The position numbers were made by a program, and so were the translations under genes. From Squalus acanthias (taxonomy: Eukaryota), in NCBI GenBank assembly GCA_030390025.1, contig JASTWF010000069.1:248001-312000 (forward strand): DNA of 64,000 nucleotides. Reading direction: 5' to 3'. Below, piece after piece: positions 5,490-53,065 of the stretch. The notes under the pieces are model-generated. The model was not told the DNA's origin. It was given only the letters and a program-made list of their open reading frames with translations, and did no database searches. The first letter of the stretch is position 1. Each line of letters opens with the position of its first letter.

Positions 5490-5514
5490 CTCAGAAGCCT
5501 AGTGCAACCTCTAC

Positions 5515-12683: not shown

Positions 12684-15600
12684 ATGGTAAAGGTTCTGAC
12701 TAAAGGTCTTCGACCTGAAACATTAACTCTGTTTTTCTCTCCACAGATGCTGTCTGGCCTGCTCAGTTTTTCCAGCATTTTCTGTTATTTCGGATTTCCA
12801 ACATCCGCTGTATTTTGCTGTTGTATATGTGATGGTCTCGGCGCTGCGGGGAGGGGAAGGACCGGCCTCCGGGACTCTGTGTGGCTCGAATCACAAATTC
12901 AGTCTCCACACAGCACAGATGTAACCAAGACCTTTCCAGGGTGTCAGGCTAACCTGCCGCGGTTTGATGTCTGGATGTTACAAACTGATATGGGCGGGGG
13001 GACTGGGGGCTCGGTCTGTCTCTCCGTCAATCTCCGGCTCTGAACACACGGACAGGAGGAGGAGCACTGAGAGAGACTGAGACTGAGAGAGCGACGTTAT
13101 CCTTTAAAAAGGGGGCACATGCTGATCCTTATATTGGGGTAGGAGAGAGAGAGAGAGAGAGAGACTGACTGACTGACTGACTGACTGGGAGAGGGGTTGT
13201 CGTGGCCCCCCCGTGTCCGCACTCCCACTCTGCCTCACCCAGTCAGTAAACTCACTGAGGCTCTTTCCCCACCCGGGGAGAGTCGCCCCGCGGGTAAAGG
13301 ACCGCTCACTGGGCGGGGTTAAAATCTCCTTTTTCTCCGCTGTGTTTTGGGTGTTTGAGCTGCTCTGAAAAGGGGGCGATTCTGTTCCATTCCTGTGCTT
13401 TGTGTCGTTGCCCCTGGGGCAGAGTCTCCTAAAGGGGCTGTTAGACAAGGCAACTCCTCACCAGGCGGAGGAGGGAGGGCGAGAGAAGTTTAAATCACAA
13501 AACTCTCAATTACAGCAAGTGGGACATTGGAGGAATTGGTGGGTGGAGACTCATTGATCGCCTGTCAATCATCACCCGGGGGAAATGACCCTGAGCAGGA
13601 GGAAGGAACTGTGCAAAGGCTTCACTCTGCTTTCTTGTTGCAGGGATCGAGCTTGCTGAACCTGCTGCTGCTGCTGCTGAATATTGCTGGGGTTTCGGGT
13701 AAGTGCTGTGACTCGAGTAACATTTCAGTTCAAGTGTCAGTGGTTGATTCGTTGGGTCAGTGTCGAAGCCTGGGGGTGTGTGTGTGGACCTCAGTCCCAA
13801 ATCCAGCGGCAGTTTGGCTCTCTTACTGCCAGTTAACCGCCAGTGTGGGTCATTGATATTAATTGCATCAGGAAATCCTCGAGTTTGGAAGCACTGTATG
13901 TACTGCCTGTGGGCCATTGAGGGAGTGGACACAGTAGGTGAACTGAGAGCTGAAAGGAAGGCAGGTAATGTCTTCAGATTAACCCCTGTGATGTGATCCG
14001 CTGCTTTTGGTTTGTTTGATTCAGCCATTCCCAGGCTTTGGGTTGTAGTAATAAAGGTAGTTCAATGAACACATTGAAAATGTTTGATGAAATGTAACAT
14101 CTTATTTTGGATATTAGAAATTTGCAACTGATGCATAAACTAAACAAACTTTAAAATCCAATTTGAAGTTTATTTGTTGTAAAGTGTGATGCTGAGGTGG
14201 TTTTGACATAAATGTTTACGTAGGGAATCTCCATTTTAAATCTTTCCCATTAAAAATTACAAAAGAAATAATTGCTTGGTATAGACGGGACTTGTCGCTA
14301 TAAATTATAAAATTCTCATCCTCGTGTTCAAATCCCTCCATGGCCCTCGCCCCTCCCTATCTCTGTAACCTCCTCCAACCCTTCCAGATCTCTGCGCTCC
14401 TCCAATTCCGGCCTCTTGCACATCCCCCGATTTCCATCGCTCCACCATTGGCGGCCGTGCCTTCAGCTGCCTGGGCCCCGAGCTCTGGAATTCCCTCCCT
14501 AAACCTCTCCGCCTCTCTCTCTCCTCCTTTAAGACTCTGCTTAAAACCTACATCTTTGACAGAGTGTTTGGTCACCTGTTATAATATCTCCTTATGTGGC
14601 TCGGTGTCAAATTTTATTCGTTGATCGCTGCTGTGAAGCTTGGAAACACAAGGCCAGAGAATGAATAACACCCGGGCTGAGAAAAAGGCCTTGTCTTATC
14701 AGGGTATGATGCGTTTCCAAACTGTCTGTTGTTCGTACATCGCCCTTTCCTCCACAGTTTCACTCACTCTAAAAATGCTAAGGGAAAGGATGCTATATAA
14801 ATGGTGCTTGTTGTAAATAGTACATGCCTGAGCTTCAGCCTTCCCACAGCAGTGAAAGCAGTGAGTTACTGGTCAGAGCTTCTTGCAGTGTATCCCTGTG
14901 AAGCTTGGGATGGAATGTTCCAGCAGGGAGGTTATATCTGAGGATAAATACTTTGAATCTTTTCCAGGTTCTTTGCCTGTCACAGTTTCTGGGTTCCTTG
15001 GGGAGCAGGTTGTGCTGCCCTGTACCTACAAAGGGAATGCCTCAGTCCCAGATTTACAAGTCATTTGGCGAATACCCGGGCCTGAAGTTGTCCACAAGTT
15101 TGTCGATGGGAGCGATGATTTGACACAGCAAGACCCGCGGTTCAGAAACAGAACAAACCTCTTCAAAGATCAACTGGAACACGGCAACTGGTCAGTTCTG
15201 CTCTCTGACCTCAGGCAGTCGGACCAGAACAAGTATGACTGTCTGATTTTCAGGAGGACGGGTGAGGGCTTTGATCAGGAGCAAGCTGTTCTCGTCCATC
15301 TCTCTGTAACAGGTGAGAGGTTTCTGTTTCAGGGCTTCTGCATTGATCAGGAGTCTGTTAGCAATTTTATGGGTATGATAGTGGAGCGGTTCTGTTACTA
15401 GATTAATAATCCAGAGAAGGTGAGTTCAAATCCCACCATGGCACTTTGAGAATTTGAGAATAAATCTGGAAATAAAAAGTTGGTATCAATAGAAGTGACC
15501 ATGAAGCTGTTGAATTGCCATAAAACCCAACTGGTTCACTGATGTCCTTCAGGGAAGGAAACCTGCCGTCCTTACCCGGTCTGGTCTATAGGTGACTCCA

Positions 15601-18600
15601 GTCCCACACCAACGTGGTTGGCTTTTCATGGCCCTCTGTGGCCCAGCAAGCCAATAAGTTTCTATCAAACCACTAGAAAGAATTTTACTGAATGGGCCAG
15701 GCCACAGCAAAGGCAAATCCAGCCCAGCCGACCCTGCAAAGTCCTCCTCACTAACACCTGGAAACTGGTGCCCAAGTTGGGAGAGCTGTGTGACATAGTC
15801 ATACTCCCAGAATCAACCCTACATCCCAGACTCCTCTATCACCATCCCCGGGTATGTCCTGTCCCACCGGAAGGACAGACCCACCAGAGGTGGGAGCTCA
15901 GTGGTATACAGTCGGGTGGGAGTGGCCCCGGGAGTCCTCAACATTGACTCTGAACCCCATGAAGTCTCACGGCTTCAGGTTAAACCTGGGCAAGGAAACC
16001 TCCTGCTGATTACCACCTACCGCCCTCCCTCGGTGGTTGAATCAGCACTCCTCCATGTTGAACACCACTTGGAGGAAGCACTGAGGGTAGCAAGGGCACA
16101 GAATGTATTGAGTGGGAGACTGCAATGTCCATCACCAAGGGTGGCTCGGTACCACCACTGACCGAGCTGGCTGAGCCCTGAAGGACAGAGCTGCCAAACT
16201 GGGTGATGGATGGAGTCAGTGGTGCTCTGAAGCTGCACTCACTCACCAGGAACGGGCTACATCTGTCTCCAGATGTTGGGGTGCAGGAGCTTGGGCCCAA
16301 AGCACCTCTGGAGCAGCCTTTAAAAGACCCAGTGCTCTTACCTTGAAGGTGTATCCCAGTAGGCCCAGGATCCTGTGGGAATGCACTCCACAGGCGGATG
16401 TAGGCTGCTGGGAACGATACTGCTCGGGGTAACTCTGGAAATCTTCCATTCTGCCCCTCAGTTAATGCAATCCTGTTGGATTTTTCACTCTGCCGACCCT
16501 GTTGCTGATCCTTCCTGATCAGTTTGACCCCAGTCTCGTTCCTCCCTGGATGTGTTTCCCTGCAGCCCTATAGAGTCTTTGAACATTTCTGCAGTTTGTT
16601 TCACAATACTAAACGCATGATGTTTTCTTTAGAGCGAGCCCGTTCACCTGTACCGAACACGCCCGCACCAGGTAAGTCTGTTTCTAAACTACTGCATGTG
16701 TTTTCAGCTCTTACATTCTATCGTGCGGGATAGACGGGCAGTAACACTGGAAGGTTTGAAATGCTGTTTGATATTTTGCCAAAGAATGATTCTGAGAGTG
16801 AGTGGTGTGGGTCACCGTTACCTGGAACTGCTCTTTAAACTACCTGCAATTGTTATTTCTGCTTCTGAGCCTCGCCTTCCTGTCCCTCAGCGGCTGAACT
16901 CTGAGGATTCCCGCTTCCCGCTAGCATTAGTGTTTGTGGAAGTCTGTGGGAAAGTCCGAGCCCTCCTGTCGGGAAACTGACGGGACAGGGTGCAACGCTG
17001 GTTGAAGTCACCGGAGAGTAATATTGGCCCAGCTGTGAAACCGGCGTTCCACCCGATCCCGTGCAAAGAGCCAATTGTAAAAGCATTTTGAGATTTCATT
17101 GGTTCAAAGTGTGACGCCGAGATGTTTCCATTTAAAAATGGCAAAAGAATGATGCCTGCCTCACACGGGACTTGTCATTCTAAATAGTACATGCCTGAGC
17201 TTCAGCCTTCCCACAGCAGTGAAAGCAGTGAGTTACTGGTCAGAGCTTCTTGCAGTGTATCCCTGTGAAGCTTGGGATGTAATGTTCCAGCAGGGAGGTT
17301 ATATCTGTGGATAAATACTTTGAATCTTTTCCAGGTTCTTTGCCTGTCACAGTTTCTGTGTTCCTTGGGGAGCAGGTTGTGCTGCCCTGTACCTACAAAG
17401 GGAATGCCCCCGTCCCAGATTTACAAGTCCTTTGGCAAATACCTGGGCCTGAAGTTGTCCACCAGTTTGTCGATGGGAGCGATGATTTGACACAGCAAGA
17501 CCCGCGGTTCAGAAACAGAACAAACCTCTTCAAAGATCAACTGGAACACGGCAACTGGTCAGTTCTGCTCTCTGACCTCAGGCAGTCCGACCAGAACGAG
17601 TATGAGTGTCTGATTTTCAGGAGGACGGGTGTGGATTTTCATTGGGAGCAAGATGTCTCCGTCCGTCTCTCTGTAACAGGTGAGAGGTTTCTGTTTCTGC
17701 ATTGATCAGGAATCTGTTAGCAATTTTATGGGTACGATAGTGCAGGGGTTCTGTTACTAGATTAATAATCCAGAGGCCTGGGCTCATAATCCAGAGAAGG
17801 TGAGTTCAGATCCCACCATGGCACTTTCAGAATTTGAGAATAAATCTGGAAATAAAACGTTGGCATCAATAGAAGTGACCCTGAAGCTGTTGGATTGCCG
17901 TCAAACTCAACTAGTTCACTGATGTCCTTTAGGGAAGGAAACCTGCCGTCCTTACCCGGTCTGGTCTATAGGTGACTCCAGTCCCACACCAACGTGGTTG
18001 ACTTTTCACGGCCCTCTGTGGCCCAGCAAGCCAATCAGTTTCTATCAAACCACTAGAAAGATAAACAAGAATTAAATTGGACGAGCCAGGCATTGAACCA
18101 GGACACAGGAAAGGCAAATCCAGCCCAGTCAACCCTGCAAAGTCCTCCTCACTAACATCTGGGGACTGGAGCCCAAGTTGGGAGAGCTGTGTGACATGGT
18201 CATACTCCCAGAATCAACCCTACATCCCAGACTCCTCCATCACCATCCCCGGGTATGTCCTGTCCCACCGGAAGGACAGACCCACCAGAGGTGGGGGCTC
18301 AGTGGTATACAGTCGGGTGGGAGTGGCCCCGGGAGTCCTCAACATTGACGACAATGGGGAATAATATTGGGCCGGGTGTGAAACCGGCGTTCCACCCGAT
18401 CCCAAGACTTCCCCGACCCACAGATTAGTTTAAAATTCCCCCTCTGTTTCAGCGGGCTGTTGGGTTTAATTGTAGGGAGGCTGCTGCTTGTCAGTCTCCA
18501 GTTATCTCTATCGGGAAGCCTGTATCGATCGCATTGTGGGGCAGTGTGTGTGTGTGTTCAAGGAGCTGTGGGCTGGCCTGGTGTGTGTGATTATTGGAAT

Positions 18601-21400
18601 CTAACCTCTCCCATCGCTCCGGGGCTAGAATTGACCAGGGATCTATTTGTGCTGGGGATGGTTCTGAAGCACTCGGTGCTGAAGGTCTCTGCTGTTAGTT
18701 TGTGAGTGTGTCCCGGTCTGTTAACGGTTTATTCTGTCTCTAGATCCTGGACTCTCTACTGGAGCAGCAGTCGCATTGGGGATCGGAATTCTTGCTCTTC
18801 TTACTCTTGCTGTCATTGGGGTTTTCCTGATCCGAAAGCGATGGTGGTGAGTTCTAGAATGTGCCGCAGTTTCCATTGTTGATTCTAGTTTTGTTCTATT
18901 ACACTTTGTGTTTAAAGATGTTGTGTGCAGCGATACACTTTGAGCTGTGTGCGATGCTTCAATGTAGCATTATCCCGTCACTTCCAGCTTGTTGTCATCT
19001 CTGTTGCTCCGTTCACTAGCCACCGACTCCATCCCTCTCCCTGGCCACTGTCTGAGGCTGAACCAGTTCACAACCTCGGTGTCTTATTAGACCCTGAGCT
19101 GAGCTTCCGACCCGTATCCTCCCCATCACCAAGACCGCCTACTGCCACCTCCGTAACATCGCCCGTCTCCGCCCCTACCTCAGCTCATCTGCTGCTGAAA
19201 CCCTCATCCATGCCTTACCGCAAAACGCGACCATTTCAAAACTCTCCTTTCTGTATCCTAACTCGCACCAAGTCCCGTTCACCCATCACCCTCTGTGTTC
19301 ACTGACCTACATTCATCCTCCTGTTCAAATCCCTCCGTGGCCTCCTCCAGCCCCACAATCCTTCGAGATCTCTGCGCTCCTCCAATTCTGGCCTCTTGAG
19401 CATCCCTGATTTCCATCGCTCCACCATTGGTGGCCGTGACATCAGCTGCCTGGGCCCTAAGCTCTGGAATTCCCTCCCTAAACCTCTCCGCCTCTCTCCT
19501 CCTTTAAGATGCTCCTTAAAACTGACCTATTTGAGCAAGCTTTTGGTCTCCTGCCCTAATATCTCCTTATGTGGCTCGCTGTCAAATTTTGTTTGATCGC
19601 TCCTGTGAAGCACCTTGGGCGATAAAGGCGCTATATAAATTCAAGTTGTTGCTCTATCTCCACTTGTGCTTACATTTTTCAAACCACCCCCTTGACCCGG
19701 CCATCAGTGATTCCGATCACTGAGAAGGCCATCCTGGATTTCCTTGTCTCCCTCAACATCCACCTCTCCCTGCCCATCTCTTACCCCCCACTTCCCCCTT
19801 TGCCCCCCGATGGGGAGAAGGAACTATTGCTGGGATCTCTAACTCTTCTCTGGTCTTTCCCCGTCACGATATTTCTGCCTCCGTTAGCCTGTTTGGCCAC
19901 TGCTAGAACAGGCTTGACCACATCAAGGAATACCATCTCCATCTGTGGCTCTCAGTACTTCAGGATCAGACTGGAGAGTACGGACATGCCCAACATCCTC
20001 CTGTCTGATCTGATCCCCATCATCTTTTACTCATTTACTAGAGTTCTTTGATGTAACGAGCAGGGTGGATAAAGGGGAACCAGTAGATGTAGTGTATTTG
20101 GATTTCCAGAAGGTATTCGATAAGGTGCCACATAAAAGGTTACTGCACAAGATAAGAGCTCACGGGGTTGGGGGTAATATATTAGCATGGATAGAGGATT
20201 GGCTAACTAACAGAAAACAGAGAGTTGGGATAAATGGGTCATTTTCTGGTTGGCAAACTGTAACTAGTGGGGTGCCACAGGGATCAGTGCTGGGGCCTCA
20301 AATATTTACAATCTGTATTAATGACTTGGATGAAGGGACCGTGTGTACTGTAGCCAAATTTGCTGATGATACAAAGATAGGTGGGAACACAAGTTGTGAG
20401 GAGGACACAGTCTGCAAAGAGATATGGATAGGCTAAGTGGGCAAAAATTTGGCAGATGGAGTATAATGTGGGAAAATGTGAGGTTATCCACTTTGGTAGG
20501 AAAAATAAAAAAGCAAATTATTATTTAAATAGAGAGAGACTACATAATGCTGCAGTACAGAGGGATCTGGAGGTCCTCATACATGAAACACAAAGTTAGC
20601 ATGCAGGTACAGCAAGTAATTAGGAAGGCAAATGGAATGTTGGCCTTTATTGCAAGGGGGATGGAGTATAAAAGTAGGGAAGTCTTGCTACAACTGTACA
20701 GGGCGCTGGTGAGACCACACCTGGAGTACTGCGTACAGTTTTGGTCTCCTTATTTAAGGAGGGATAGGGATATACTTGCATTGGAGGCAGTTCAGAGAAG
20801 GTTCACTAGGTTGATTCCTGGGATGAAGGGGTTGTCTTATGAAGAAAGGTTGAGCAGGTTGGGTCTATACTCATTGGAGTATCGAAGAATGAGAGGGGAT
20901 CTTATCGAAACATATAAGATTCTGAGGGGGCTCGACAGGGTAGATGCAGGGAGGATGTTTCCCCTCGTGGGGGAATCTAGAATTAGGGGGCACAGTTTCC
21001 GGATAAGGGGTCGCCCATTTAAAACAGAGATGAGGAGGAATTTCTTCTGAGGGTCGTGAATCTTTGGAATTCTCTACCCCAGAGAGCTGTGGAGGCTGGG
21101 TCATTGAATATATTCAAGGCGGAGATAGACAGATATTTCAGCTACAGGGGAGTCAAGGGTTATGGGGAGCGGGCGGGAACGTGGCATTAAGGCCAAGATC
21201 AGATCAGCCATGATCTTATTGAATGGCGGGGCAGGCTCGAGGGGTGGAATGGCCGACTCCTGATACTATTTCTTATGTTCTCATCAATTCTTTCTTAATC
21301 TCCAAAATTGAGGCTAGCTGTCATTTTTCTATTTCTCTGGTGCCTCAGGCAGCACGGGTCCTGTGGAGTGTACAGCTCCTGCCCATTGCCTCCCCTATAA
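12684..21400 (+). CDS. Gene A: B7/butyrophilin-like receptor with two IgV domains (leader-V-linker-V-TM-short tail), ~313 aa; join(12684-12686,13644-13698,14968-15312,16633-16671,17335-17679,18744-18846,21349-21400)
   Basis: All introns GT-AG with consistent phases (0,1,1,1,1,2); 942 nt with no internal stop. The ATG-only first exon and the last exon are the least certain parts. Confidence 0.75.
12689..12830 (+). mobile_element. ~140-bp Penelope-like terminal-repeat insert with a degenerate hammerhead-like core
   Basis: Flanked by a GATGGT duplication (12683-12688, 12831-12836). The empty site is seen in the inverted copy at ~28212-28240. Core reads CTGACTA..AGGTC-TTC-GACCT-GAAAC. Confidence 0.6.
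13143..13187 (+). repeat. (GA)n(GACT)n microsatellite
   Basis: Seen directly; much shorter in the paralogous intron at ~47204-47217. Confidence 0.9.
13644..13698 (+). CDS. Gene A signal-peptide exon (GSSLLNLLLLLLNIAGVS-G)
   Basis: ttcttgttgcag| ... TCGG|gtaagt; hydrophobic core encoded by (CTG)6; phase 0-1. Confidence 0.85.
14300..14812 (+). mobile_element. L2-like 3' fragment / composite insertion in the leader-V intron
   Basis: ggccgtgccttcagctgcctggg...ctctggaattccctccctaaacc motif; TAAAT at both ends; absent from the paralogous intron at ~17165-17195. Confidence 0.65.
14968..15312 (+). CDS. Gene A IgV exon V1 (B7/BTN-family V-set domain)
   Basis: tttccag|...ACAG|gtgaga, 345 nt, phase 1-1. 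B-strand Cys (LPCTY), C-strand Trp, QDPRFRNRTNLF...GNWSV and DQNKYDC match the VTCN1/CD276/HHLA2/BTN IgV pattern. Confidence 0.92.
15400..16200 (+). mobile_element. tRNA-headed SINE-like segment plus degenerate LINE endonuclease fragment
   Basis: gagttcaaatccc B-box-like motif; LVPKLGEL..DIVILPES and LLLITTYRPPS endonuclease-like motifs; repeated at ~17790-18350, ~34090-34345 and ~49430-49985. Confidence 0.6.
16633..16671 (+). CDS. Gene A 39-bp Pro-rich linker/stalk exon (ERARSPVPNTPAP-G)
   Basis: tgttttctttag| ... CCAG|gtaagt, phase 1-1. Confidence 0.8.
17335..17679 (+). CDS. Gene A IgV exon V2
   Basis: ttttccag|...ACAG|gtgaga, 345 nt; 14 aa differences from V1. Confidence 0.92.
18744..18846 (+). 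CDS. Gene A transmembrane exon (DPGLSTGAAVALGIGILALLTLAVIGVFLIRKRW)
   Basis: ttctgtctctag| ... TG|gtgagt; hydrophobic span followed by RKR stop-transfer; phase 1-2. Confidence 0.88.
19050..19652 (+). mobile_element. L2-like LINE 3' fragment
   Basis: acaacctcggtgtc..gaccctgagctgagc, and a tail ending taaaggcgctatataaat..agttgttg; paralogues at ~38625-39235 and ~50700-51315. Confidence 0.7.
20031..21280 (+). mobile_element. Degenerate 5'-truncated CR1 LINE
   Basis: [39 protein letters not shown] in broken frames; paralogues at ~39615-40870 and ~51695-52945. Confidence 0.9.
21349..21400 (+). CDS. Gene A putative cytoplasmic-tail exon (W-QHGSCGVYSSCPLPPL*)
   Basis: ttttctatttctctggtgcctcag| acceptor, phase 2; conserved in all three units; AATAAA at 21593-21598. 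Confidence 0.6.
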
Positions 21401-25940: not shown

Positions 25941-25949
25941 CCTGTGGGT

Positions 25950-35500: not shown

Positions 35501-35507
35501 GATTTAG

Positions 35508-42961: not shown

Positions 42962-45249
42962 TTTGTGTAAATAAATAAATGTATATAATGTGTCTGCCTT
43001 TCTCTCTCCTGTATACTGGAATGTCACTTTTCTATATGTACATTTTGAACCTGTGATTAAAGGGAAGCCCCTGTTTATACGAGTGGATGTACAGTCTTGC
43101 TTTGTTTAAGGACCGAAAGCAGAGTAACGGTGAATGGTTGTTTTTCAGACTGGAGGGAGGTATACAGTGGTGTCCAAGGGCTTGCTGTTGGGACCACTGC
43201 TCTTTTGATGTATATTAATGACCTAGTCTTGGGTATACAGGGCATCATTTCAAAGTTTGCAGATGACATGGAACTCTGAAATGTAATAAGACAGCGAGAT
43301 GGGGCAGGAACAGACTTCAGGAGGATCGAGAGCGAGACAGACTGAATCATAGAATAGAATCAGAGAAATTTACAGCACAGGAGGAGGCCATTCGACTCAC
43401 TGTGTCTGTGCCGGCCGAATGAGCTATCCAGTCTAATCCCACTTTCCAGCTCTTGGTCCATGGCCCTGTAGGTTACGGCACTTCAAGTGCATATCCAAGA
43501 ACTTTTTAAATGTGATGAGGGTTTCTGCCTCTACCACCCTTTCAGGCAGTGAGTTCCAGACCCCCACCACCCTCTGGGTGAAAAAAGTTCTCCTCAACTC
43601 CCCTCTAATCCTTCTACCAATTACTTTAAATCTCTGCCCCCTGGTTATTGACCTCACTGCTAGGGGAAATAGGTCCTTCCTATCCACTCTATCTAAGCCC
43701 CTCATCATTTTATACACCTCAATTAAGTCCTTCCCTCAACCTCCTCTGTTCCAAAGAAAACAACCCCAGCCTATCCAATCTTTCCTCATAGCTAAAATTC
43801 TCCAGTCCTGGCAACATCCTCGTAAATCTCCTCTGCACCCGCTCTAGTGCAATCACGTCTTTCCTGTAATGTGGTGACCAGAACTGTGCACAGTACTCTA
43901 GCTGTGGCCTAACCAGCGTTTTATACAATTCAAGCATAACCTCCCTGCTCTTATATTCTATGCCTCGGCTAATAAAGGAAAGTATCCCGTATGCCTTCTT
44001 AACCACCTTATCTACCTGTCCGGTTACCTTCAGGGGTCTGTGGACATGCACTCCAAGGAGCCTCTGTTCCTCTACAAGTCTCAGTATCCTACCATTTATT
44101 GTGTATTCCCTTGCCTTGTTAGCCCTCCCCAAATGCATTACCTCACACTTCTCCAGTTTGAGTTCCATTTACCACTTCTCTGCCCACCTGACCAGTCCAT
44201 CGATATCTTCCTGCAGTCCACAGCTTTCTTCCTCATTATCAACCACATTGCCAATTTTTGTATCATCTGCAAAATTCTTAATCATGCCCCCTACATTGAA
44301 GTCTAAATTACTGATATATACCACAAAAAGCAAGGGGCCTAGTACAGAACCCCACTGGAAACAGCCTTCCAGTCACAGAAACACCCGTCGGCCATTACCC
44401 TTTGTTTCCTGCCACTGAGCCAATTTTGGATCCAACTTGCCACGTTCCCGTGGATCCCGAGAGCTTTTACTTTTCTGACCAGTCTGCCATGTGGGACCTT
44501 GTCAAAAGCCTTGCTAAAATCTATGTAGAGTACATCAACCCGACAATCCTATGGGGAGCACCTTCACCACACGGGACGGCGGCGGTTCAAGAAGAAGGCC
44601 CGCCAACACTTTCTCAAGGGACGACGAGGGATGGGCAATAAATGCCGGCCTTGCCAGCGACATCTCGAGAATTATTATTTCAAAAATGTGGCAACTCATT
44701 CGTTCCACTGCTTTTACATCCAGTAGATTGTGCTCCATTATGAAGACCCTTTTTATATGGACGGGTCCTTAGCCTGATGAACAATGCCCTACCAGGAGGG
44801 TCCGGCTAGATACGATGGGTGTCGGGTTGACACTCCACTCCCATCGGGCACCAGAACCTCGCTGGATGTCAACCCAGTATTCAGAGACTGGAATTCTCGC
44901 CTCCGCTCGCCAGGGTAGAGGTAACAAGTCGGGATCGGAATAAAGAGGTAAAAAGGTGTCTGGTGAAAAAGCCACAGCCATGAGGAGGTTCAATGTGTCT
45001 CAGATACTGGAACAAGCCCAGCAGCAACCAATGGAGGGTTCAATGTGTCCTGGACACTGAAGTAAACTCAATCACAATGATGAGGAAGGTCGAGTTGATC
45101 CTGGAGAATGCTTGCAATCAGAAGTAGTGTGTCTGGAGGCCACACGGACAGTCAAACATGATCCAAATCATAGCAACACGAGGAGAGACCCCCAACCAAC
45201 AGTCCAATGAATCTCGGAAAGGTAATTCCCATTTTCAGTTTTCTCACTT

Positions 45250-46160
45250 TACACACAGCAAGGTCCCACAAACAGCACTGAGATAAATGACCAGTTAATC
45301 TGTTTTGGATGTTGCCTGAGGGATAAATATTGGCCTGAGGACACCGGGGAGAACTCCCCTGCTCTTCTTTGAAATGATGGCCGTCCACCCGAGAGGCCTT
45401 GTTTAACGTTTCATCTGAAAGACGGCACCTCCGACAGTGCGGCCCTGCCTCAGTACTGCCCCTCTGACAGTGTGGCGCTCCCTCAGTTCTGCCCCTCTGA
45501 CAGTGCGGAGCTCCCTCAGTACTGCCACTCCGACAGTGCGGTGCTCCCTCAGTACTGCTCCTCCGACAGTGCGGCGCTCCCTCAGTACTGCCCCTCCGAC
45601 AGTGCGGCACTCCCTCAGTACTGCCCCTCTGACAGTGCGGTGCTCCCTCAGTACTGCCCCTCCGACAGTGCGGCGCTCCCTCAGTACTGCCCCTCCGACA
45701 GTGCAGCGCTCCCTCAGTACTGCCCCTCCGACAGTGCAGCGCTCCCTCAGTACTGCCCCTCCGACAGTGCGGCGCTCCCTCTGTACCGCCCCTCCGACAG
45801 TGCAGCGCTCCCTCAGTACTGCCCCTCCGACAGTGCGGCGCTCCCTCTGTACCGCCCCTCCGACAGTGCGGTGCTCCCTCAGTACTGCTCCTCCGACAGT
45901 GCAGCGCTCCCTCAGTACTGCCCCTCCGACAGTGCGGCGCTCCCTCTGTACTGCCCCTCCGACAGTGCGGTGCTCCCTCAGTACTGCCCCTCCGATAGTG
46001 CGGCGCTCCCTCTGTACCGCCCCTCCGACAGTGCGGCGCTCCCTCAGTACTGCCCCTCCGACAGTGCAGCGCTCCCTCAGTACTGCCCCTCCGACAGTGC
46101 GGCGCTCCCTCAGTACCGCCCCTCCGACAGTCCCTCAGTACTGCCTCTCCGACAGTGCAT
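45250..46160 (-). repeat. Deu-SINE fragment plus 33-bp minisatellite (~22 units, 45428-46160)
   Basis: Same unit and context as 11536-12190. Confidence 0.9.
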
Positions 46161-46307
46161 CGCTCCCATCGACAAACTTGTGCAAAACTTCATGCTCCGC
46201 TATTCGCCAAACTACTTGTAAATCTGGGACTGGGGCATTCCCTTTGTAGGTACAGGGCCGCACAACCTGCTCCCCAAGGAACACAGAAACTCTGACAGGC
46301 AAAGAAC
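46158..46307 (-). pseudogene. Truncated IgV pseudo-exon (psiV2), inverted, upstream of gene C
   Basis: ttccag|GSLPVRVSVFLGEQVVRPCTYKGNAPVPDLQVVWRIAEHEVLHKFVDGSD, then minisatellite. Confidence 0.9.
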
Positions 46308-46549
46308 CTGGAAAAGATTCAAAGTGTTTATCCACAGATATAACCTCCCTGCTGTGAATCTTTTATTCAAACCAATAATACCAATTACATAGTAAAACCA
46401 TTACATTCATCCATCACAGTAAATACAGTACAAATACCGCCAAAGAATAGAACACAATTAATTGTGTTTTTTCCTCCACTCTGTGACTTACAATCCCCCA
46501 ACTTCACTTGGTTCCACCGCAAGAAGCTTATATACTACAACTGTAACTG

Positions 46550-46742: not shown

Positions 46743-49700
46743 ATGGTAAAGGTTCTGACGAAAGGTCCTCGACCTGAAACATTAACTCTGTTTTTCTCTC
46801 CACAGATGCTGTCTGGCCTGCTGAGTTTTTCCAGCATTTTTTGTTGTTATTTCGGATTTCCAACATCCGCTGTATTTTGCTGTTGTATATGTGATGGTCT
46901 CGGCGCTGCGGGGAGGGAGAGACCGGCCTCCGGGACTCTGTGTGGCTCGAATCACAAATTCAGTCTCCACACAGCACAGATGTAACCAAGACCTTTACAG
47001 GGTGTCAGGCTAACCTGCCGCGGTTTGATGTCTGGATGCTGCAAACTGATATGGGCGGGGGGACTGGGGGCTCGGTCTGTCTCTCCGTCAATCTCCGGCT
47101 CTGAACACAGGGACAGGAGGAGGAGCACTGAGAGAGACTGAGACTGAGAGAGCGACGTTATCCTTTAAAAAGGGGGCACATGCTGATCCTTAAATTAGGG
47201 TAAGAGAGAGACTGACTGGGAGAGGGGTTGTCGTGGCCTCCCGTGTCCGCACTCCCACTCTGCCTCATCCAGTCAGTAAACTCACTGAGGCTCTTTCCCC
47301 ACCCGGGTTAAGGGCCGCTCACTGGGCGGGGTTAAAATCTCCTTTTTCTCCGCTGTGTTTTGGGTGTTTGAGCTGCTCTGAAAAGGGGGCGATTCTGTTC
47401 CATTCCTGTGCTTTGTGTCGCTGCCCCTGGGGCAGTGTCTCCTAAAGGGGCTGTTAGACAAGGCAACTCCTCACCAGGCGGAGGAGGGAGGGCGAGAGAA
47501 GTTTAAATCACAAAACTCTCAATTACAGCAAGTGGGACATTGGAGGAATTGGAGACTCATTGATCGCCTGTCAATCATCACCCGGGAGCAATGACCCTGA
47601 GCAGGAGGAAGGAACTGTGCAAAGGCTTCACTCTGCTTTCTTGTTGCAGGGATCGAGCTTGCTGAACCTGCTGCTGCTGCTGCTGCTGCTGAATACTGCT
47701 GGGGTTTCAGGTAAGTGCTGTGACTCGAGTAACATTTCAGTTCAAGTGTCAGTGGTTGATTCGTTGGGTCAGTGTCGAAGCCTGGGTGTGTGTGTGGACC
47801 TCAGTCCCAAATCCAGCGGCAGTTTGGCTCTCTTACTGCCAGTTAACCGCCAGTGTGGGTCATTGATATTAATTGCATCAGGAAATCCTCGAGTTTGGAA
47901 GCACTGTATGTACTGCCTGTGGGCCATTGAGGGAGTGGACACAGTAGGTGAGCTGAGAGCTGAAAGGAAGGCAGGTAATGTCTTCAGATTAACCCCTGTG
48001 ATGTGATCCGCTGCTTTTGGTTCGTTTGATTCAGCCATTCCCAGGCTTTGGGTTGTAGTAATAAAGATAGTTCAATGAACACATTGAAAATGTCTGATGA
48101 AACATAACATCTTATTTTGGACATTAGAAATTTGCAACTGATGCATAAACTAAACAAACTTTAAAATCCAATTTGAAGTTTATCTGTTGGAAAGTGTGAT
48201 GCTGAGGTGGTTTTGACATTATAAATGTTTACGCAGGGAATCTCCATTTTAAATCTTTCCCATTTAAAAATTACAGAAGAAATAATTGCTTGGCATACAC
48301 GGGACTTGTCGCTATAAATTATAAAATTCTCATCCTCGTGTTTAAATCCCTCCATGGCCCTCGCCCCTCCCTATCTCTGTCACCTCCTCCAACCCTTCCA
48401 GATCTCTGCGCTCCTCCAATTCTGGCCTCTTGCGCATCCCCCGATTTCCATCGCTCCACCATTGGCGGCCGTGCCTTCAGCTGCCTGGGCCCCAAGCTCT
48501 GGAATTCCCTCTCTCTCCTCTAAGATGCTGCTTAGAACCGACCTCTTTGACAGAGCGTTTGGTCACCTGTTATAATATCTCCTTATATGGCTTGGTGTCA
48601 AAATTTATTCGTTGATCGCTGCTGTGAAGCCTGGAAACACAAGGCCAGAAAATGAATAACACCCGGGCTGAGAAAAAGGCCTTGTCTTATCAGGGTATGA
48701 TGCGTTTCCAAACTGTCTGTTGTTCGTACATCGCCCTTTCCTCCACAGTTTCTCTCACTCTGAAAATGCTCAGGGAAAGGATGCTCAGGGAAAGGATGCT
48801 ATATAAATGGTGCTTGTTGTAAATAGTACATGCCTGAGCTTCAGCCTTCCCACAGCAGTGAAAGCAGTGAGTTACTGGTCAGAGCTTCTTGCAGTGTAAC
48901 CCTGTGAAGTTTGGGATGTAATGTCCCAGCAGAGAGGTTATATCTGTGGATAAATACTTTCAATCTTTTCCAGGTTCTTCGCCTGTCACAGTTTCTGGGT
49001 TCCTTGGGGGGCAGGTTGTGCTGCCCTGTACCTACAAAGGGAATGCCCCAGTCCCAGATTTACAAGTACTTTGGCAAATATCCGAGCGTGAAGTTTTGCA
49101 CCAGTTTGTCAATGGGAACGATGATTTGACACAGCAAGACCCGCGGTTCAGAAACAGAACAAACCTCTTCAAAGATCAACTGGAACACGGCAACTGGTCA
49201 GTTCTGCTCTCTGACCTCAGGCAGTCCGACCAGAACGAGTATGAGTGTCTGATTTTCAGGAGGACGCGTGTGGTCTTTTATTGGGTGCAAGATGTCTCAG
49301 TCCTTCTCTCTCTAACAGGTGAGGTTTCTGTTTCTGCATTGATCAGGAGTCTGTCAGCAATTTTATGGGTACGATAGTGCAGGGGTTCTGTTACTAGATT
49401 AATAATCCAGAGGCCTGGGCTCATAATCCAGAGAAGGTGAGTTCAAATCCCACCATGGCACTTTGAGAATTTGAGAATAAATCTGCAAATAAAAAGTTGG
49501 TATCAAAAGAAGTGACCCTGAAGCTGTTGGATTGTCGTCAAACCCAACTGGTTCACTAATGTCCCTTAGGGAAGGAAACCTGCCATCCTTACCCGGTCTG
49601 GTCTATAGGTGACTCCAGTCCCACACCAACATGGTTGACTTTTCACGGCCCTCTGTGGCCCAGCAAGTCAATCAGTTTCTATCAAACCACTAGAAAGATA

Positions 49701-52700
49701 AACAAGAATTAAATTGGATGAGCCAGGCATCGAACCAGGACACAGGAAAGGCAAATCCAGCCCAGTCAACGCTGCAAAGTCCTCCTCACTAACATCTGGG
49801 GCCTGGTGCCCAAGTTGGGAGAGCTGTGTGACATGGTCATACTCCCAGAATCAACCCTAAATCCAGACTCCTCTATCACCATCCCCGGGTATGTCCTGTC
49901 CCACCGGCAGGACAGACCCACCAGAGGTGGGGGCTCAGTGGTATACAGTCGGGTGGGAGTGGCCCCGGGAGTCCTCAACATTGACGACAATGGGGAGTAA
50001 TATTAGGCTGGGTGTGAAACCGGCGTTCCACCCGATCCCAAGACTTCCCCGACCCACAGATTAGTTTAAAATTCCCCCTCTGTTTCAGCGGGCTGTTGGG
50101 TTTAATTGTAGGGAGGCTGCTGCTTGTCAGTCTCCAGTTATCTCTATCGGAAAGCCTGTATTGATCGCATTGTGGGGCAGTGTGTGTGTGTGCAAGGAGC
50201 TGTGGGCTGGTGTGTGTGATTATTGGAATCGAACCTCTCCCATCGCTCCGGGGCTAGAATTGACCAGGGATCTATTTGTGCTGGGGATGGTTCTGAACCA
50301 CTCGGTGCTGAAGGTCTCTGCTGTTAGTTTTGTGAGTGTGTCCCGGTCTGTTAACGGTTTATTCTGTCTCTAGATCCTGGACACACTACTGGAGCAGCAG
50401 TTCGATTGGGAATCGGAATTCTTGCTCCTCTTACTCTTGCTGTTTTCATTGGGGTTTTCCTGATCCGAAAGCGACGGTGGTGAGTTCTAGAATGTGCCGC
50501 AGTTTCCATTGTTGATTCTAGTTTTGTTCTATTACACTTTGTGTTTGAAGATGTTGTGTGCAGCGATACACTTTGAGCTGTGTGCGATGCTTCAATGTAG
50601 CATTATCCCATCACTTCCAGCTTGTTGTCATCTCTGTTGCTCCGTTCACTAGCCACCGACTCCATCCCCTCTCCCTGGCCACCGACTCCATCCCTCTCCC
50701 TGGCCACTGTCTGAGGCTGAACCAGTTCACAACCTCGGCGTCTTATTAGACCCTGAGCTGAGCTTCCGACCCGTATCCTCCCCATCACCAAGACCGCCTA
50801 CTTCCACCTCCGTAACATCGCCCGTCTCCGCCCCTACCTCAGCTCATCTGCTGCTGAAACCCTCATCCATGCCTTACCGCAAAACTCGACCATTTCAAAA
50901 CTCTCCTTTCTGTATCCTAACTCACACCAAGTCCCGTTCACCCATCACCCTCTGTGTTCACTGACCTACATTCATCCTCCTGTTCAAATCCCTCCGTGGC
51001 CTCCTCCAGCCCCACAACTCTCCGAGATCTCTGCACTCCTCCAATTCTGGCCTCTTGAGCATCCCTGATTTCCATCGCTCCACCATTGGCGGCCGTGCCT
51101 TCAGCCGCCTGGGCCCCGAGCTCTGGAATTCCTTCCCTAAACCTCTCTGCCTCTCTCTCTCCTCCTTTAAGATGCTCCTTAAAACTGACCTCTTTGACCA
51201 AGTTTTTGGTCGCCTGTCCTAATATCTCCTCATGTGGCTCGCTGTCAAATTTTGTTTGATCACCACTGTGAAGCACCTTGGGCGATAAAGGCGCTATATA
51301 AACTCAAGTTGTTGCTCTATCTCCACTTGTGCTTAAATTTTTCAAACCACCCCCTTGACCCGGCCATCAGTGATTCCGATCACTGAGAAGGCCATCCTGG
51401 ATTTCCTCGTCTCCCTCAACATCCACATCTCCCTGCCCACCTCTTACCCCCCACTTCCCCCTTTGCCCCCCGGTGGGGAGAAGGAACTATTGCTGGGATC
51501 TCTAACTCTTCTCTGGTCTTTCCCCATCACGATATTTCTGCCTCCGTTAGCCTGTTCGGCCACTGCTAGAACAGGCTTGACCACATCAAGAAATACCATC
51601 TCCATCTGTGGCTCTCAGTACTTCAGGATCAGACTGGAGAGTACGGACATGCCCAACATCCTCCTGTCTGATCTGATCCCCATCATCTTTTACTCATTTA
51701 CTAGAGTTCTTTGATGTAACGAGCAGGGTGGATAAAGGGGAACCAGTAGATGTGGTGTATTTGGATTTCCAGAAGGTATTCGATAAGGTGCCACATAAAA
51801 GGTTACTGCACAAGATAAGAGCTCACGGGGTTGGGGGTAATATATTAGCATGGATAGAGGATTGGCTAACTAACAGAAAACAGCGAGTCGGGATAAATGG
51901 GTCATTTTCTGGTTGGCAAACTGTAACTAGTGGGGTGCCACAGGGATCAGTGCTGGGTCCTCAAATACTTACAATCTGTATTAATGACTTGGATGAAGGG
52001 ACCGTGTGTAATGTCGCCAAATTTGCTGCTGATACAAAGATAGGTGGGAACACAAGTTGTGAGGAGGACACAGAGTCTGCAAAGGGATATGGATAGGTTA
52101 AGTGGGCAAAAATTTGGCAGATGGAGTATAATGTGGGAAAATGTGAGGTTATCCACTTTGGTAGGAAAAATAAAAAAGCAAATTATTATTTAAATGGAGA
52201 GAGACTACATAATGCTGTGGTACAGAGGGATCTGGGGGTCCTCATACATGAAACACAAAGTTAGCATGCAGGTACAGCAAGTAATTAGGAAGGCAAATGG
52301 AATGTTGGCCTTTATTGCAAGGGGGATGGAGTATAAAAGTAGGGAAGTCTTGCTACAACTGTACAGGGCGCTGGTGAGACCACACCTGGAGTACTGCGTA
52401 CAGTTTTGGTCTCCTTATTTAAGGAGGGATAGGGATATACTTGCATTGGAGGCAGTTCAGAGAAGGTTCACGAGGTTAATTCCTGGGATGAAGGGGTTGT
52501 CTTATGAAGAAAGGTTGAGCAGGTTGGGTCTATACTCATTGGAGTATCGAAGAATGAGAGGGGATCTTATCGAAACATATAAGATTCTGAGGGGGCTCGA
52601 CAGGGTAGATGCAGGGAGGATGTTTCCCCTCGTGGGGGAATCTAGAATTAGGGGGCACAGTTTCCGGATAAGGGGTCGCCCATTTAAAACAGAGATGAGG

Positions 52701-53065
52701 AGGAATTTCTTCTGAGGGTCGTGAATCTTTGGAATTCTCTACCCCAGAGAGCTGTGGAGGCTGGGTCATTGAATATATTCAAGGCGGAGATAGACAGATA
52801 TTTCAGCTACAGGGGAGTCAAGGGTTATGGGGAGCGGGCGGGAACGTGGCATTAAGGCCAAGATCAGATCAGCCATGATCTTATTGAATGGCGGGGCAGG
52901 CTCGAGGGGTGGAATGGCCGACTCCTGATACTATTTCTTATGTTCTCATCAATTCTTTCTTAATCTCCAAAATTGAGGCTAGCTGTCATTTTTCTATTTC
53001 TCTGGTGCCTCAGGCAGCACGGGTCCTGTGGAGTGTACAACTCCTGCCCATTGCCTCCCCTATAA
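46743..53065 (+). CDS. Gene C: B7/butyrophilin-like single-IgV receptor (leader-V-TM-tail), ~188 aa; join(46743-46745,47650-47710,48974-49318,50374-50479,53014-53065)
   Basis: GT-AG introns, phases 0,1,1,2; 567 nt with no internal stop. Confidence 0.75.
46748..46892 (+). mobile_element. Penelope-like terminal-repeat insert with a minimal hammerhead-like motif
   Basis: CTGACGA-A-AGGTC-CTC-GACCT-GAAAC at 46755-46780; GATGGT duplication at 46742-46747 and 46893-46898. Confidence 0.6.
47650..47710 (+). CDS. Gene C signal-peptide exon (GSSLLNLLLLLLLLNTAGVS-G)
   Basis: ttgttgcag| ... TCAG|gtaagt; (CTG)8. Confidence 0.85.
48974..49318 (+). CDS. Gene C IgV exon (V3)
   Basis: ttttccag|...ACAG|gtgagg, 345 nt; canonical Cys/Trp/Cys retained. 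Confidence 0.92.
50374..50479 (+). CDS. Gene C transmembrane exon (DPGHTTGAAVRLGIGILAPLTLAVFIGVFLIRKRR)
   Basis: ctctag| ... TG|gtgagt; in-frame 3-bp insertion relative to A and B. Confidence 0.88.
53014..53065 (+). CDS. Gene C putative cytoplasmic-tail exon (W-QHGSCGVYNSCPLPPL*)
   Basis: Same acceptor as gene A; AATAAA at 53258-53263. Confidence 0.6.

What the first reader, a model, noticed from the sequence alone, without database searches (positions are those of the whole stretch)
12684..53065. Tandem family of IgC-less B7/BTN-like receptors with variable domain architecture (V-V, V, relic)
Seen: phase-consistent spliced genes A (leader-V-linker-V-TM-tail) and C (leader-V-TM-tail), relic B, and two pseudo-V exons in repeated units. 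Established: the V motif (VH.F..G.D.L..QD.RF.NRT.LF..QL..GN.S..L..L...D...Y.C) is that of B7-family/BTN IgV domains (VTCN1, CD276, HHLA2), which normally pair V with IgC. V-only members such as MOG and chicken BG are exceptions. Inference: this is a lineage-specific immune-type receptor cluster undergoing birth and death, likely missed or mis-annotated as generic 'CD276-like'.
Basis: partly seen in the sequence, partly recalled or inferred. Interest (0 to 1): 0.85.

Follow-up and report, generated by a model that had tools for sequence, protein, structure and literature searches.

The report
Shark V-only B7-like gene cluster
This stretch of a shark genome holds two tandem, transcribed genes and one broken copy of a shark-wide family of cell-surface proteins built from one or two B7-type antibody-like V domains with no constant domain, a family that databases name inconsistently and that I found described in no paper.

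Summary
Three intact 345-nt, phase 1-1 IgV exons lie on the + strand. Two truncated V relics lie on the - strand. Gene A reads leader, V, 39-nt hinge, V, TM, tail. Gene C reads leader, V, TM, tail. B is a 3' relic with a broken hinge, TM and tail, and a LINE has inserted into it. All exons have canonical AG/GT ends.

Contigs from public runs carry joints exactly at hinge>TM and V2>TM, so no IgC exon is spliced in. No Ig-like ORF lies in the V>TM introns. None of 76 hit rows from other sharks carries a C-set Pfam domain.

The V domain is B7-type: CD276 and B7-H4 are the best solved relatives, and Foldseek puts the B7-H4 IgV first.

The family is not species-specific. It occurs in 12 named shark species under at least eight different automatic names. 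The nearest relatives outside sharks are teleost multi-V "butyrophilin-like" proteins at 39% identity or less.

"Receptor" is not supported, because the conserved tail has no tyrosine motif.

The start codon is unresolved. The tail exon of C (53251-53419) also lies outside it.

The scan's first readers noted further copies on neighbouring DNA; I did not check those notes.

Verdict: a new variant of a known kind, of moderate interest.

The parts
11493..11507 (+). Gene A, candidate exon 1 coding part (MNLGK, donor GTAAAT at 11508). The conserved exon-1 block spans about 11408-11507.
   Evidence: tblastn: Cetorhinus P0210 residues 5-36 match 11408-11503, E 1.3e-6. Pristiophorus P0001 residues 11-26 match 11460-11507, E 0.89. 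Phase 0 fits the leader acceptor. Not checked with RNA.
12176..12420 (-). Pseudo-V: the 5' half of a V exon, with a frameshift and a stop, cut off by the minisatellite at 11714-12196
13644..13698 (+). Gene A leader exon (GSSLLNLLLLLLNIAGVS-G), phase 0 to 1, with no in-frame ATG
   Evidence: A contig joint runs from the leader to a V acceptor (13695>17332, run X5).
14968..15312 (+). Gene A IgV exon 1 (345 nt, phase 1-1)
16633..16671 (+). Gene A 39-nt proline-rich hinge micro-exon (E-RARSPVPNTPAP-G), phase 1-1
   Evidence: Joint 16671>18744 in X1 and X5. A V-exon end is seen as a loose end before 16631 in X1.
17335..17679 (+). Gene A IgV exon 2 (345 nt, phase 1-1)
   Evidence: Joint 17679>18744 in X5.
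18744..18846 (+). Gene A transmembrane exon (PGLSTGAAVALGIGILALLTLAVIGVFLIRKRW), phase 1 to 2
21586..21754 (+). Gene A last exon: 55-aa cytoplasmic tail plus stop codon
26672..26762 (-). Orphan inverted copy of exon 1 (96.7% to A's), inside an inverted duplicate of 10252-12196
35503..35533 (+). Relic B: the first 31 nt of the hinge region, truncated
35950..38254 (+). 5'-truncated LINE inserted in B's intron. It carries most of an open 808-codon reverse-transcriptase ORF (35729-38155).
38319..38421 (+). Relic B transmembrane exon (open, splice sites intact)
41177..41345 (+). Relic B tail exon (open). It differs from A's tail by 9 nonsynonymous and 1 synonymous change, including L>P in the conserved EQNLL box.
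45207..45221 (+). Gene C candidate exon 1 coding part (MNLGK, donor GTAATT)
46144..46353 (-). Pseudo-V: 70 open codons of the 5' half of a V exon, cut off by the minisatellite at 45428-46131
47650..47710 (+). Gene C leader exon (GSSLLNLLLLLLLLNTAGVS-G)
48974..49318 (+). Gene C IgV exon (345 nt, phase 1-1)
50374..50479 (+). Gene C transmembrane exon (PGHTTGAAVRLGIGILAPLTLAVFIGVFLIRKRR)
53251..53419 (+). Gene C last exon (its 168 aligned positions are identical to A's tail).
58436..58526 (-). Second orphan inverted copy of exon 1

Best explanation
A and C are two tandem paralogues of a shark-wide multigene family, and B is a 3' relic of the same family. The proteins are type I membrane glycoproteins whose ectodomain is made only of B7-type IgV domains, one or two of them. 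An optional 13-residue proline-rich hinge, one transmembrane helix and a conserved 55-residue tyrosine-free tail follow. There is no IgC.

How the architecture varies (shown): the V and hinge exons are all symmetrical phase-1 exons sitting in repeat units of about 2.4 kb. Unequal crossing-over can therefore add or remove a V, and exon skipping can drop one, without breaking the frame.

How the protein probably works (inferred): it is displayed on the cell surface as a B7/butyrophilin-like ligand or counter-structure and is read by a partner through the A'GFCC'C'' front sheet. That sheet is the only part that differs between the three V copies. The back sheet, the two N-glycosylation sequons and the tail stay fixed. 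The tail more likely directs sorting (a conserved acidic EQNLL box) than tyrosine-based signalling.
For: Exons and phases.

Spliced contigs at the exact predicted ends:
- hinge>TM, 16671>18744, in runs X1 and X5.
- V2>TM, 17679>18744, in X5.
- leader>V acceptor in X5.
- hinge followed by a V start in X1 and X2.
- a V-exon end before the hinge in X1.

No IgC:
- 0 of 10 open frames of 71 aa or more in the introns between V1 and TM of A and between V and TM of C hit any Pfam family at E<=1.
- 0 of 48 and 0 of 28 shark homologue rows carry a C-set family.

B7-type V:
- Pfam V-set, 1.9e-8 to 7e-10.
- PDB by sequence: CD276 1e-17, VTCN1 1e-14, MOG 2e-10, PD-L1 1e-9, BTN1A1 3e-7.
- AF2 model with pLDDT 94.3. 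Foldseek top hit is the B7-H4 IgV 4gos_A (TM 0.82), followed by PD-L1.

Family range:
- 48 of 48 named hits are sharks.
- 28 of 28 hits found with the TM and tail are sharks.
- In the exhaustive search, 14 of the best 150 have 58% identity or more. 13 of those 14 were looked up and all are sharks. The other 136 have 39% or less.
- Of the 14 low-identity representatives looked up, 13 are teleost proteins and 1 is unnamed.
- Tree: the shark clade has support 99, and the window copies plus Pristiophorus have support 99.

Constraint pattern:
- 25 of 114 residues vary among the three V copies. None lies in residues 49-85, the C''-D-E part (Fisher p 1.6e-5).
- A versus C: V exon 21/345 and TM 8/103 differences against 90/4097 in non-coding DNA (p 9e-5 and 0.0025). 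The tail has 0/168.
- The tail box TAPEHQ.GAAGEQNLLGN..VQ is kept in 80% or more of 37 distinct tails.
Against: - The start codon is not settled. The leader exon has no in-frame ATG, and the ATG at 13585 is out of frame and runs into stops. The MNLGK exon 1 rests on homology and phase alone.
- The contigs laid are not copy-specific. They carry C at 15042, and G and A at 18774 and 18781, unlike the reference A copy and like V2/V3 and B/C. Transcription is therefore shown for copies at least 95% like A, not for A itself.
- The runs are only guessed to be RNA. Only the GT..AG joints show that spliced RNA is present.
- Joints leader>V1, V1>hinge and hinge>V2 in forward form were not among the 15 of 133 joints shown. 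The TM>tail and exon 1>leader joints lay outside the 6000 letters laid.
- dN/dS among the V copies is 0.84-1.84 on few changes. This fits relaxed constraint as well as diversifying selection.
- No partner, tissue or function was tested. The ligand role and the sorting role of EQNLL are inference. EQNLL is not a canonical [DE]XXXL[LI] motif, and DXXLL is recalled from memory.
Confidence: 0.7

Rival explanations
1. In this genome A and C are transcribed pseudogenes. The ancestral start codon in the leader exon has been lost to a frame shift, so the spliced RNAs make no protein, and the differences between the V copies are decay.
For: - There is no in-frame ATG in either leader exon.
- The ATG at 13585 reads MTLSRRKELCKG.., resembling the MDGKELQG.. 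start of other sharks, but it is in another frame and stops (my own reading).
- The first ATG of exon 1 (11444) is in yet another frame.
- dN/dS is about 1.
Against: - Every exon from the leader to the tail is open with canonical splice sites in both copies.
- An in-phase ATG ends exon 1 in both copies.
- The tails of A and C are identical over 168 nt, while the relic B has 9 nonsynonymous changes against 1 synonymous.
- Amino-acid variation avoids the core and back sheet completely (p 1.6e-5).
- The Cys, Trp and NxT/S residues that are invariant across the family are kept.
Confidence: 0.15
2. One reading: these are immune-type receptors, with paired activating and inhibitory forms that signal into the cell carrying them. 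Gene C's Arg in the TM would then mark an emerging activating form.
For: - C's TM exon reads AAVRLGIGIL, where A has A and B has G at that position.
- The genes form a multigene cluster with variable ectodomains.
Against: - The tails of A, B and C hold no tyrosine. Only 4 of 37 distinct family tails hold any Tyr, and in 3 of them it is the last residue.
- Homologues carry an Arg one or two residues earlier at the outer edge of the helix (..GARVGLGIGI..), so a boundary Arg is the family norm and not a buried charge.
- The closest solved relatives are ligands: CD276, B7-H4 and PD-L1.
Confidence: 0.1
3. The A/C duplication is an assembly artefact (two haplotypes or a mis-joined repeat), so there is only one gene here.
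For: 17178-32248 and 48817-64000 are 97.7-99% alike over 15 kb.
Against: - The 5' parts are only 91.5-96.7% alike, and the copies differ in architecture.
- The V and TM exons differ three times more than the non-coding DNA around them.
- Contigs of other runs jump between the two V units at paralogous, non-splice positions (15485>17873 in X9, 15548>17928 in X5). A single-V copy like C, present in other samples, would give exactly this.
- Other sharks have many copies on one contig.
Confidence: 0.05

Closest known systems
B7-H4 (VTCN1), B7-H3 (CD276) and PD-L1: the B7 family of co-signalling ligands
   Same: They are the best sequence and fold matches of the V domain: CD276 1e-17, VTCN1 1e-14, PD-L1 1e-9, and Foldseek 4gos_A with TM 0.82. 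They share the type I membrane topology, a short tail without known tyrosine motifs, and phase-1 Ig exons.
   Different: The shark proteins have no membrane-proximal IgC. They carry one or two V domains joined by a proline-rich micro-exon. They are multicopy and cluster by lineage. Identity to these relatives is only about 24-30%. Orthology was not tested, because no named reference V domains could be brought into the tree.
Butyrophilin/BTNL family, including the teleost 'butyrophilin-like' multi-V proteins
   Same: Outside sharks, these teleost proteins are the nearest ones in the exhaustive search: 27-39% identity, with several V domains in a row. The Atlas look-alikes are BTN3A2, BTN2A1 and BTNL2 clusters. 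Both groups are expanded and variable in copy number.
   Different: The shark proteins have no IgC and no room for a B30.2 domain, since the tail is 55 residues. The shark clade is separated from the teleost ones by a long branch with support 99.
MOG and chicken BG (V-only relatives of butyrophilins; their features are recalled, not tested)
   Same: They have a single IgV followed directly by a transmembrane segment. The MOG V domain matches at 2e-10. BG is likewise a polymorphic multigene family.
   Different: The match is weaker than to CD276 or VTCN1. The tail is unlike either one: there is no second hydrophobic segment and no long heptad-repeat tail. V-V forms exist. The family appears restricted to sharks in the hits seen.

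Membership tests
B7 family (CD80/86, PD-L1/2, ICOSLG, CD276, VTCN1, HHLA2) | N-terminal IgV domain of B7 type | tested here: met
   Pfam V-set above the cut-off for all 3 exons. PDB phmmer best hits are CD276, VTCN1, MOG and PD-L1. The Foldseek top hit is the B7-H4 IgV with TM 0.82.
B7 family (CD80/86, PD-L1/2, ICOSLG, CD276, VTCN1, HHLA2) | Membrane-proximal IgC domain after each V | tested here: not met
   Joints run directly from V2 to TM and from hinge to TM. 0 of 10 intron ORFs hit any Pfam family. 0 of 48 and 0 of 28 homologue rows carry a C-set family.
B7 family (CD80/86, PD-L1/2, ICOSLG, CD276, VTCN1, HHLA2) | Type I membrane protein: signal peptide, one TM helix, short tail | tested here: inconclusive
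   The hydrophobic leader, TM exon and 55-aa tail were read directly. The initiator codon is not established.
B7 family (CD80/86, PD-L1/2, ICOSLG, CD276, VTCN1, HHLA2) | Orthology to one named member | tested here: inconclusive
   There are many copies per species, and the tree clusters by lineage, which argues against one-to-one orthology. No named reference V domains were in the tree.
Butyrophilins proper (BTN/BTNL) | IgV-IgC ectodomain with, in most members, a cytoplasmic B30.2 domain | tested here: not met
   There is no IgC (see above). The tail exon encodes 55 residues followed by a stop.
MOG / chicken BG type V-only proteins | A single IgV spliced directly to the TM | tested here: met
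   Gene C: V 48974-49318, then TM 50374-50479. The equivalent joint 17679>18744 is seen in contigs.
MOG / chicken BG type V-only proteins | Family-specific tail: a second hydrophobic segment in MOG, a heptad-repeat tail in BG (both recalled) | tested here: not met
   The tail KQNKDSS...EQNLLGNLAVQR has neither feature. The definitions of both features come from memory.
Paired ITIM/ITAM-coupled immune receptors | A cytoplasmic ITIM/ITSM, or a charged TM residue for an ITAM adaptor | tested here: not met
   There is no Tyr in the tails of A, B and C, and 4 of 37 family tails hold any Tyr. Only C has an Arg, and it sits at the outer edge of the helix, where homologues also carry one.

The most novel reading that the evidence does not exclude
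Sharks carry a large, chromosomally clustered system of germline-diversified B7-like proteins built from V domains alone. A common leader, hinge, TM and tail cassette is combined with different heads: one V, two V, or an unrelated Cys-rich domain seen in other sharks. The front sheet of the V evolves fastest. This would be a family of self or stress ligands co-evolving with a shark lymphocyte receptor, in the way butyrophilins work with gamma-delta T cells or B7H6 with NKp30, and it would be unknown outside selachians.
Probability: 0.2. Interest if true: 0.75.

Novelty: new variant of a known kind. Interest (0 to 1): 0.5.

Why it matters
B7 and butyrophilin ligands control lymphocyte activation. 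How that system looked in the oldest jawed vertebrates is still largely inferred from a few orthologues.

This family is shark-wide, multicopy and IgC-less, and its binding face varies while its tail is invariant. It is a concrete candidate for a lineage-specific ligand system. Its exon structure also shows directly how domain number changes through duplication or skipping of phase-1 exons.

There is a practical point as well. Automatic pipelines give these genes at least eight unrelated names, including sodium channel beta-4-like, MOG-like, ICOS ligand-like and PRDM7-like. Comparative studies that count 'CD276' or 'MOG' orthologues in sharks will therefore be misled.

Tried and rejected
It is phase-compatible with the acceptor at 13644. 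No homologue aligns to it as a start. Two predicted N-termini from other sharks match the DNA just after it, in opposite orientations (P0033 +, P0029 -). That looks like a repeat picked up by gene predictors. I recalled this sequence as a shark SINE, but the window holds only two copies, so I make no such claim.
- **ATG at 13585 inside the leader exon.** Rejected, because it is out of frame and hits stops.
- **Exon-1 reading frames MTQIIATRGETPNQQ.. and ..RRDPQPTVQ...** Cetorhinus and Mustelus models use these frames. Here they are out of phase with the leader or hold ACG and TGA.
- **Hidden IgC.** None was found.
- **Cys-rich head exon of P0204-P0210.** It is not in this window.
- **Synteny with MHC paralogons.** This could not be tested.
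- **Literature.** Six full-text searches gave no description of this family.
  - I read passages, by 'find' only, of two Greenland shark genome preprints. They mention butyrophilin only for rockfish.
  - I read passages of PMC10751288 and PMC11599192. Neither describes the family.
  - Flajnik et al. 2012 on B7 evolution is not held, so I have not seen what it says about shark B7 genes.
  - I did not ask for supplements. Supplementary gene-family tables of shark genome papers may list these genes.
- **Not used.** One protein search, one cluster look-up and one structure job, because no open question justified their cost.
Full report
**What is in the window.** The DNA is vertebrate and rich in LINEs. 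The closest proteins in public collections come from sharks, and the best is from the sawshark Pristiophorus japonicus, a squalomorph, at 72-76% identity. No N and no masked stretch occurs in the window.

A self-comparison shows a tandem segmental duplication:
- 17178-32248 matches 48817-64000 at 97.7-99%.
- 12643-15948 matches 46702-49985 at 91.5-96.7%.
- Inside the first copy, a unit of about 2.37 kb is repeated: 14811-15948 matches 17178-18349 at 91%.
- A further copy of the 3' half lies at 38254-41354, matching 18680-21763 at 96%.
- Five arrays of a 33-bp minisatellite punctuate these units.

**Check of the observation.** tblastn with the V open frames finds three complete V exons on the + strand and two partial ones on the - strand.

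I read the splice sites directly. All three V exons are 345 nt, start after ..ttttccag and end before gtgag.., and are phase 1 at both ends.

The other exons were located with homologues from other sharks and confirmed by reading:
- a 55 or 61-nt leader exon
- a 39-nt hinge exon, in A only
- a 103 or 106-nt TM exon
- a 169-nt last exon.

All have canonical AG/GT ends and compatible phases.

B keeps 31 nt of the hinge region, the TM exon and the tail exon. It has no leader and no V. A 2.3-kb LINE with an open reverse-transcriptase frame sits in its intron.

The two minus-strand V pieces are 5' halves of V exons cut off at the minisatellite. One has a frameshift and a stop.

I searched, translated and folded each exon on its own. 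I never built a joined spliced model.

**Corrections to the gene ends.** Neither leader exon has an in-frame ATG.

A block conserved with other sharks lies further upstream. Cetorhinus P0210 residues 5-36 match 11408-11503 at E 1.3e-6 and 45131-45217 at 7.7e-7. Pristiophorus P0001 residues 11-26 match 11460-11507, though weakly (E 0.89).

In the frame used by the Pristiophorus model this block ends ..P-M-N-L-G-K|gtaa. The ATG at 11493 (45207 for C) is in phase 0 with the leader acceptor and would give MNLGK-GSSLLNLLLLLL..AGVSG, a plausible signal peptide. This rests on homology and phase only. The laid stretch did not reach it.

Models in other species read the same block in three different frames (P0001, P0007, P0210), so it may be largely 5' UTR.

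Two more copies of this exon lie inverted and orphaned at 26672-26762 and 58436-58526.

**Transcription and splicing.** The single run search listed 11 runs from 3 studies, none on record as RNA.

I laid the contigs of X1, X2, X5 and X9 on 12900-18899. X1, X2 and X5 total only about 100-160 million contig letters each, yet they cover the introns at depth 10-100 and the V and TM exons at several hundred.

The decisive point is that they hold joints with GT..AG ends exactly at the predicted exon ends:
- 16671>18744, hinge to TM: one contig each in X1 and X5.
- 17679>18744, V2 to TM: one contig in X5.

Further rows fit the model:
- A contig joins the leader to a V acceptor (13695>17332, X5). The three-letter offset fits an alignment slip at ..CGG/..CAG.
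- Contigs show the hinge followed by a V-exon start. They are listed as 'goes back' 16667>14964 in X1 and X2, because the first 24 letters of V1 and V2 are identical.
- A 12-letter loose end before 16631 in X1 equals the end of a V exon.

Spliced RNA of this architecture therefore exists, with the V spliced straight to the TM.

There are limits:
- Only 15 of 133 joints were shown.
- Forward joints leader>V1, V1>hinge and hinge>V2 were not among them.
- The contigs differ from the reference A copy at 15042 (C), 18774 (G) and 18781 (A). These are the letters carried by V2/V3 and by B/C.
- The RNA therefore cannot be assigned to A rather than to an allele or a near-identical paralogue.

Non-splice jumps between the two V units (15485>17873 in X9, 15548>17928 in X5) are what a single-V copy like C gives when laid on A. 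They argue that the single-V arrangement is real.

**Is an IgC hidden?** Between V1 and TM in A, and between V and TM in C, I listed every stop-to-stop frame of 55 aa or more on the + strand. I scanned the ten that lie in those introns, 71-134 aa long, against Pfam at E<=1, and 0 of 10 hit any family. They look like LINE fragments. The direct V>TM joints agree.

The homologues agree as well. Of 48 shark proteins found with the V, 46 carry V-set and none carries a C1- or C2-set family. Of 28 found with the TM and tail, 19 carry V-set, 9 carry nothing, and none carries a C-set family.

**What kind of V.**
- Pfam gives V-set for all three exons.
- The best solved relatives by sequence are CD276 (1e-17), VTCN1/B7-H4 (1e-14), MOG (2e-10), PD-L1 (1e-9) and BTN1A1 (3e-7).
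- An AlphaFold2 model of V2, built with a 41-row alignment, has pLDDT 94.3.
- Its best Foldseek matches are the B7-H4 IgV (4gos_A, TM 0.82, 30% identity) and then many PD-L1 IgV entries.
- The Atlas look-alikes are butyrophilin clusters.

**Range of the family.**
- The word-based search gave 48 hits among 68 candidates, all from sharks of 11 named species.
- The TM and tail search added Scyliorhinus torazame.
- The names differ wildly: CD276 homolog, BTN1A1-like, ICOS ligand-like, MOG-like, sodium channel beta-4-like, CD86-like, VTCN1-like, BTNL2, JAM-like, PRDM7-like and uncharacterized.
- All hits of a species share one 'longest contig' length. For example, all 13 Heterodontus hits sit on a contig of 44,089,062 letters, which suggests one cluster per genome.

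The exhaustive profile-free search of 1.84 billion representatives found 3253 proteins at E<=1e-3.
- Among the best 150, 14 have 58-73% identity. The 13 I could name are sharks, and P0171 was not looked up.
- The other 136 have 39% identity or less.
- Of 14 of those 136 that I looked up, 13 are teleost proteins with several V domains, and one is unnamed.

No ray or chimaera appeared. That is not proof of absence.

In a tree of 71 V domains over 114 columns (quick IQ-TREE, SH-aLRT only), the shark family is one clade against eight teleost domains (99). The three window domains group together (84) and, with Pristiophorus, form a clade (99). Heterodontus, the lamniforms and the orectolobiforms each form their own groups.

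Two-V proteins occur in 12 of the 61 shark proteins tabulated, plus P0202 and P0212 by reading.
- In the orectolobiforms, the first domains of V-V proteins group across species (99), so V-V is old there.
- In Cetorhinus, Pristiophorus and this genome, the two domains of one protein are each other's near relatives. That means either repeated duplication or homogenisation.

**How the architecture changes.** V1, hinge and V2 are all phase 1-1. Any of them can therefore be duplicated, deleted or skipped without breaking the frame. The three copies show this at the DNA level:
- A's second V lies in a 2.37-kb direct repeat.
- C has one such unit, flanked by A-like sequence on both sides. Its left flank aligns with the V1 unit and its right flank with the V2 unit.
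- B has lost the V unit at the same repeat.

The hinge>TM joint shows the same thing at the RNA level, or else comes from a V-hinge-TM paralogue, which is the commonest form in other sharks.

**Constraint.**
- Among the three V copies, 25 of 114 residues vary.
- All 25 lie in strand A, the A-B and B-C loops, strand C, the CC' loop, C', the start of C'', F, the FG turn and G of the model.
- None lies in residues 49-85, which cover the rest of C'', D and E with the two N-x-T/S sequons (Fisher p 1.6e-5).
- The family consensus shows the same two variable regions.
- Pairwise dN/dS is 0.95, 1.84 and 0.84.
- Between A and C, the V exon has 21/345 differences and the TM exon 8/103, against 90/4097 in aligned non-coding DNA (p 9e-5 and 0.0025). 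The tail exon has 0/168.
- V1 against V2 within A is not different from its flanks (21/345 against 37/785, p 0.38).
- The relic B's tail has 9 nonsynonymous and 1 synonymous change against A, one of them in a conserved Leu.

In B7 proteins the front sheet is the receptor-binding face (recalled knowledge). Variation confined to that face, with a frozen back sheet and tail, fits a surface ligand under diversifying pressure better than it fits decay. With so few changes, however, conversion from other paralogues cannot be excluded.

**Tail.** Across 37 distinct tails the box TAPEHQ.GAAGEQNLLGN..VQ is kept in 80% or more. A, B and C have no tyrosine. Only 4 of 37 tails have one, and in 3 of them it is the last residue. 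ITIM or ITAM-type signalling is therefore unsupported. EQNLL resembles acidic dileucine sorting signals (recalled), which is a lead only.

The same leader, hinge, TM and tail occur in other sharks with a Cys-rich head of about 85 residues that has no Pfam match, or with no head at all (P0204-P0213). No such head exon lies in this window.

**Earlier notes of the scan.** All are first-reader notes, and I did not check them unless stated.
- Similar V-V and single-V genes were noted 8.6 kb upstream (s1-889437), and 48 kb and 138 kb downstream (s1-890821, s1-890823).
- A Cys-rich type I gene was noted 10 kb downstream (s1-890676).

If these hold, the cluster spans more than 200 kb. The scan has therefore already seen this family on neighbouring DNA.

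**Novelty and verdict.** The proteins exist as automatic predictions in other sharks. In six searches I found no paper describing the family. Supplements and Flajnik et al. 2012 were not seen.

V-only B7/BTN relatives and lineage-expanded IgSF families are known kinds. What is new is a selachian-wide, IgC-less family with one or two V domains, a shared cassette and a variable front sheet.

I rate it a new variant of a known kind, with interest 0.5.

Noticed in passing
window 35729-38155 (+): An open frame of 808 codons. Its first 74 or so codons are intron sequence shared with gene A (18460-18681). The rest is a 5'-truncated LINE reverse transcriptase inserted in relic B, and it may be a recent insertion.
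   Followed up: partly
window 11714-12196, 25952-26480, 32985-33849, 45428-46131, 57617-58244: Five arrays (14.7-26.2 copies, 90-92% matches) of one 33-bp minisatellite, in both orientations. They sit at the edges of the duplicated units and at the break points of both pseudo-V exons, so they are candidate recombination sites.
   Followed up: partly
   Followed up: no
window 304-8556: GC-rich (62-65%) LINE remains on the minus strand: an 871-aa reverse-transcriptase ORF (1593-4208), an endonuclease-like ORF (4743-5489), a 516-aa ORF (5879-7429) and an esterase-like ORF1 (304-1248). No cellular gene was seen.
   Followed up: no
window 14300-14700, 15500-16100, 17900-18300: Contig depth reaches thousands to a million in all four runs, so these are high-copy interspersed repeats inside the introns of gene A.
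   Followed up: no
proteins P0204-P0210 (Scyliorhinus, Hemiscyllium, Cetorhinus): The same leader, hinge, TM and tail cassette carries a Cys-rich head of about 85 residues without any Pfam match. P0206, P0211 and P0213 have no head at all. This points to head swapping within the cluster.
   Followed up: partly
window 11408-11507 and three further copies: Gene models of three shark species read the conserved exon 1 in three different frames (P0001, P0007, P0210). This suggests it is mostly untranslated and that predicted N-termini in this family are unreliable.
   Followed up: partly
window 50374-50479: Gene C's TM exon has Arg in AAVRLGIGIL and a 3-nt insertion relative to A. Homologues carry Arg one or two residues earlier, so it looks like a boundary residue and not a buried charge.
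   Followed up: partly
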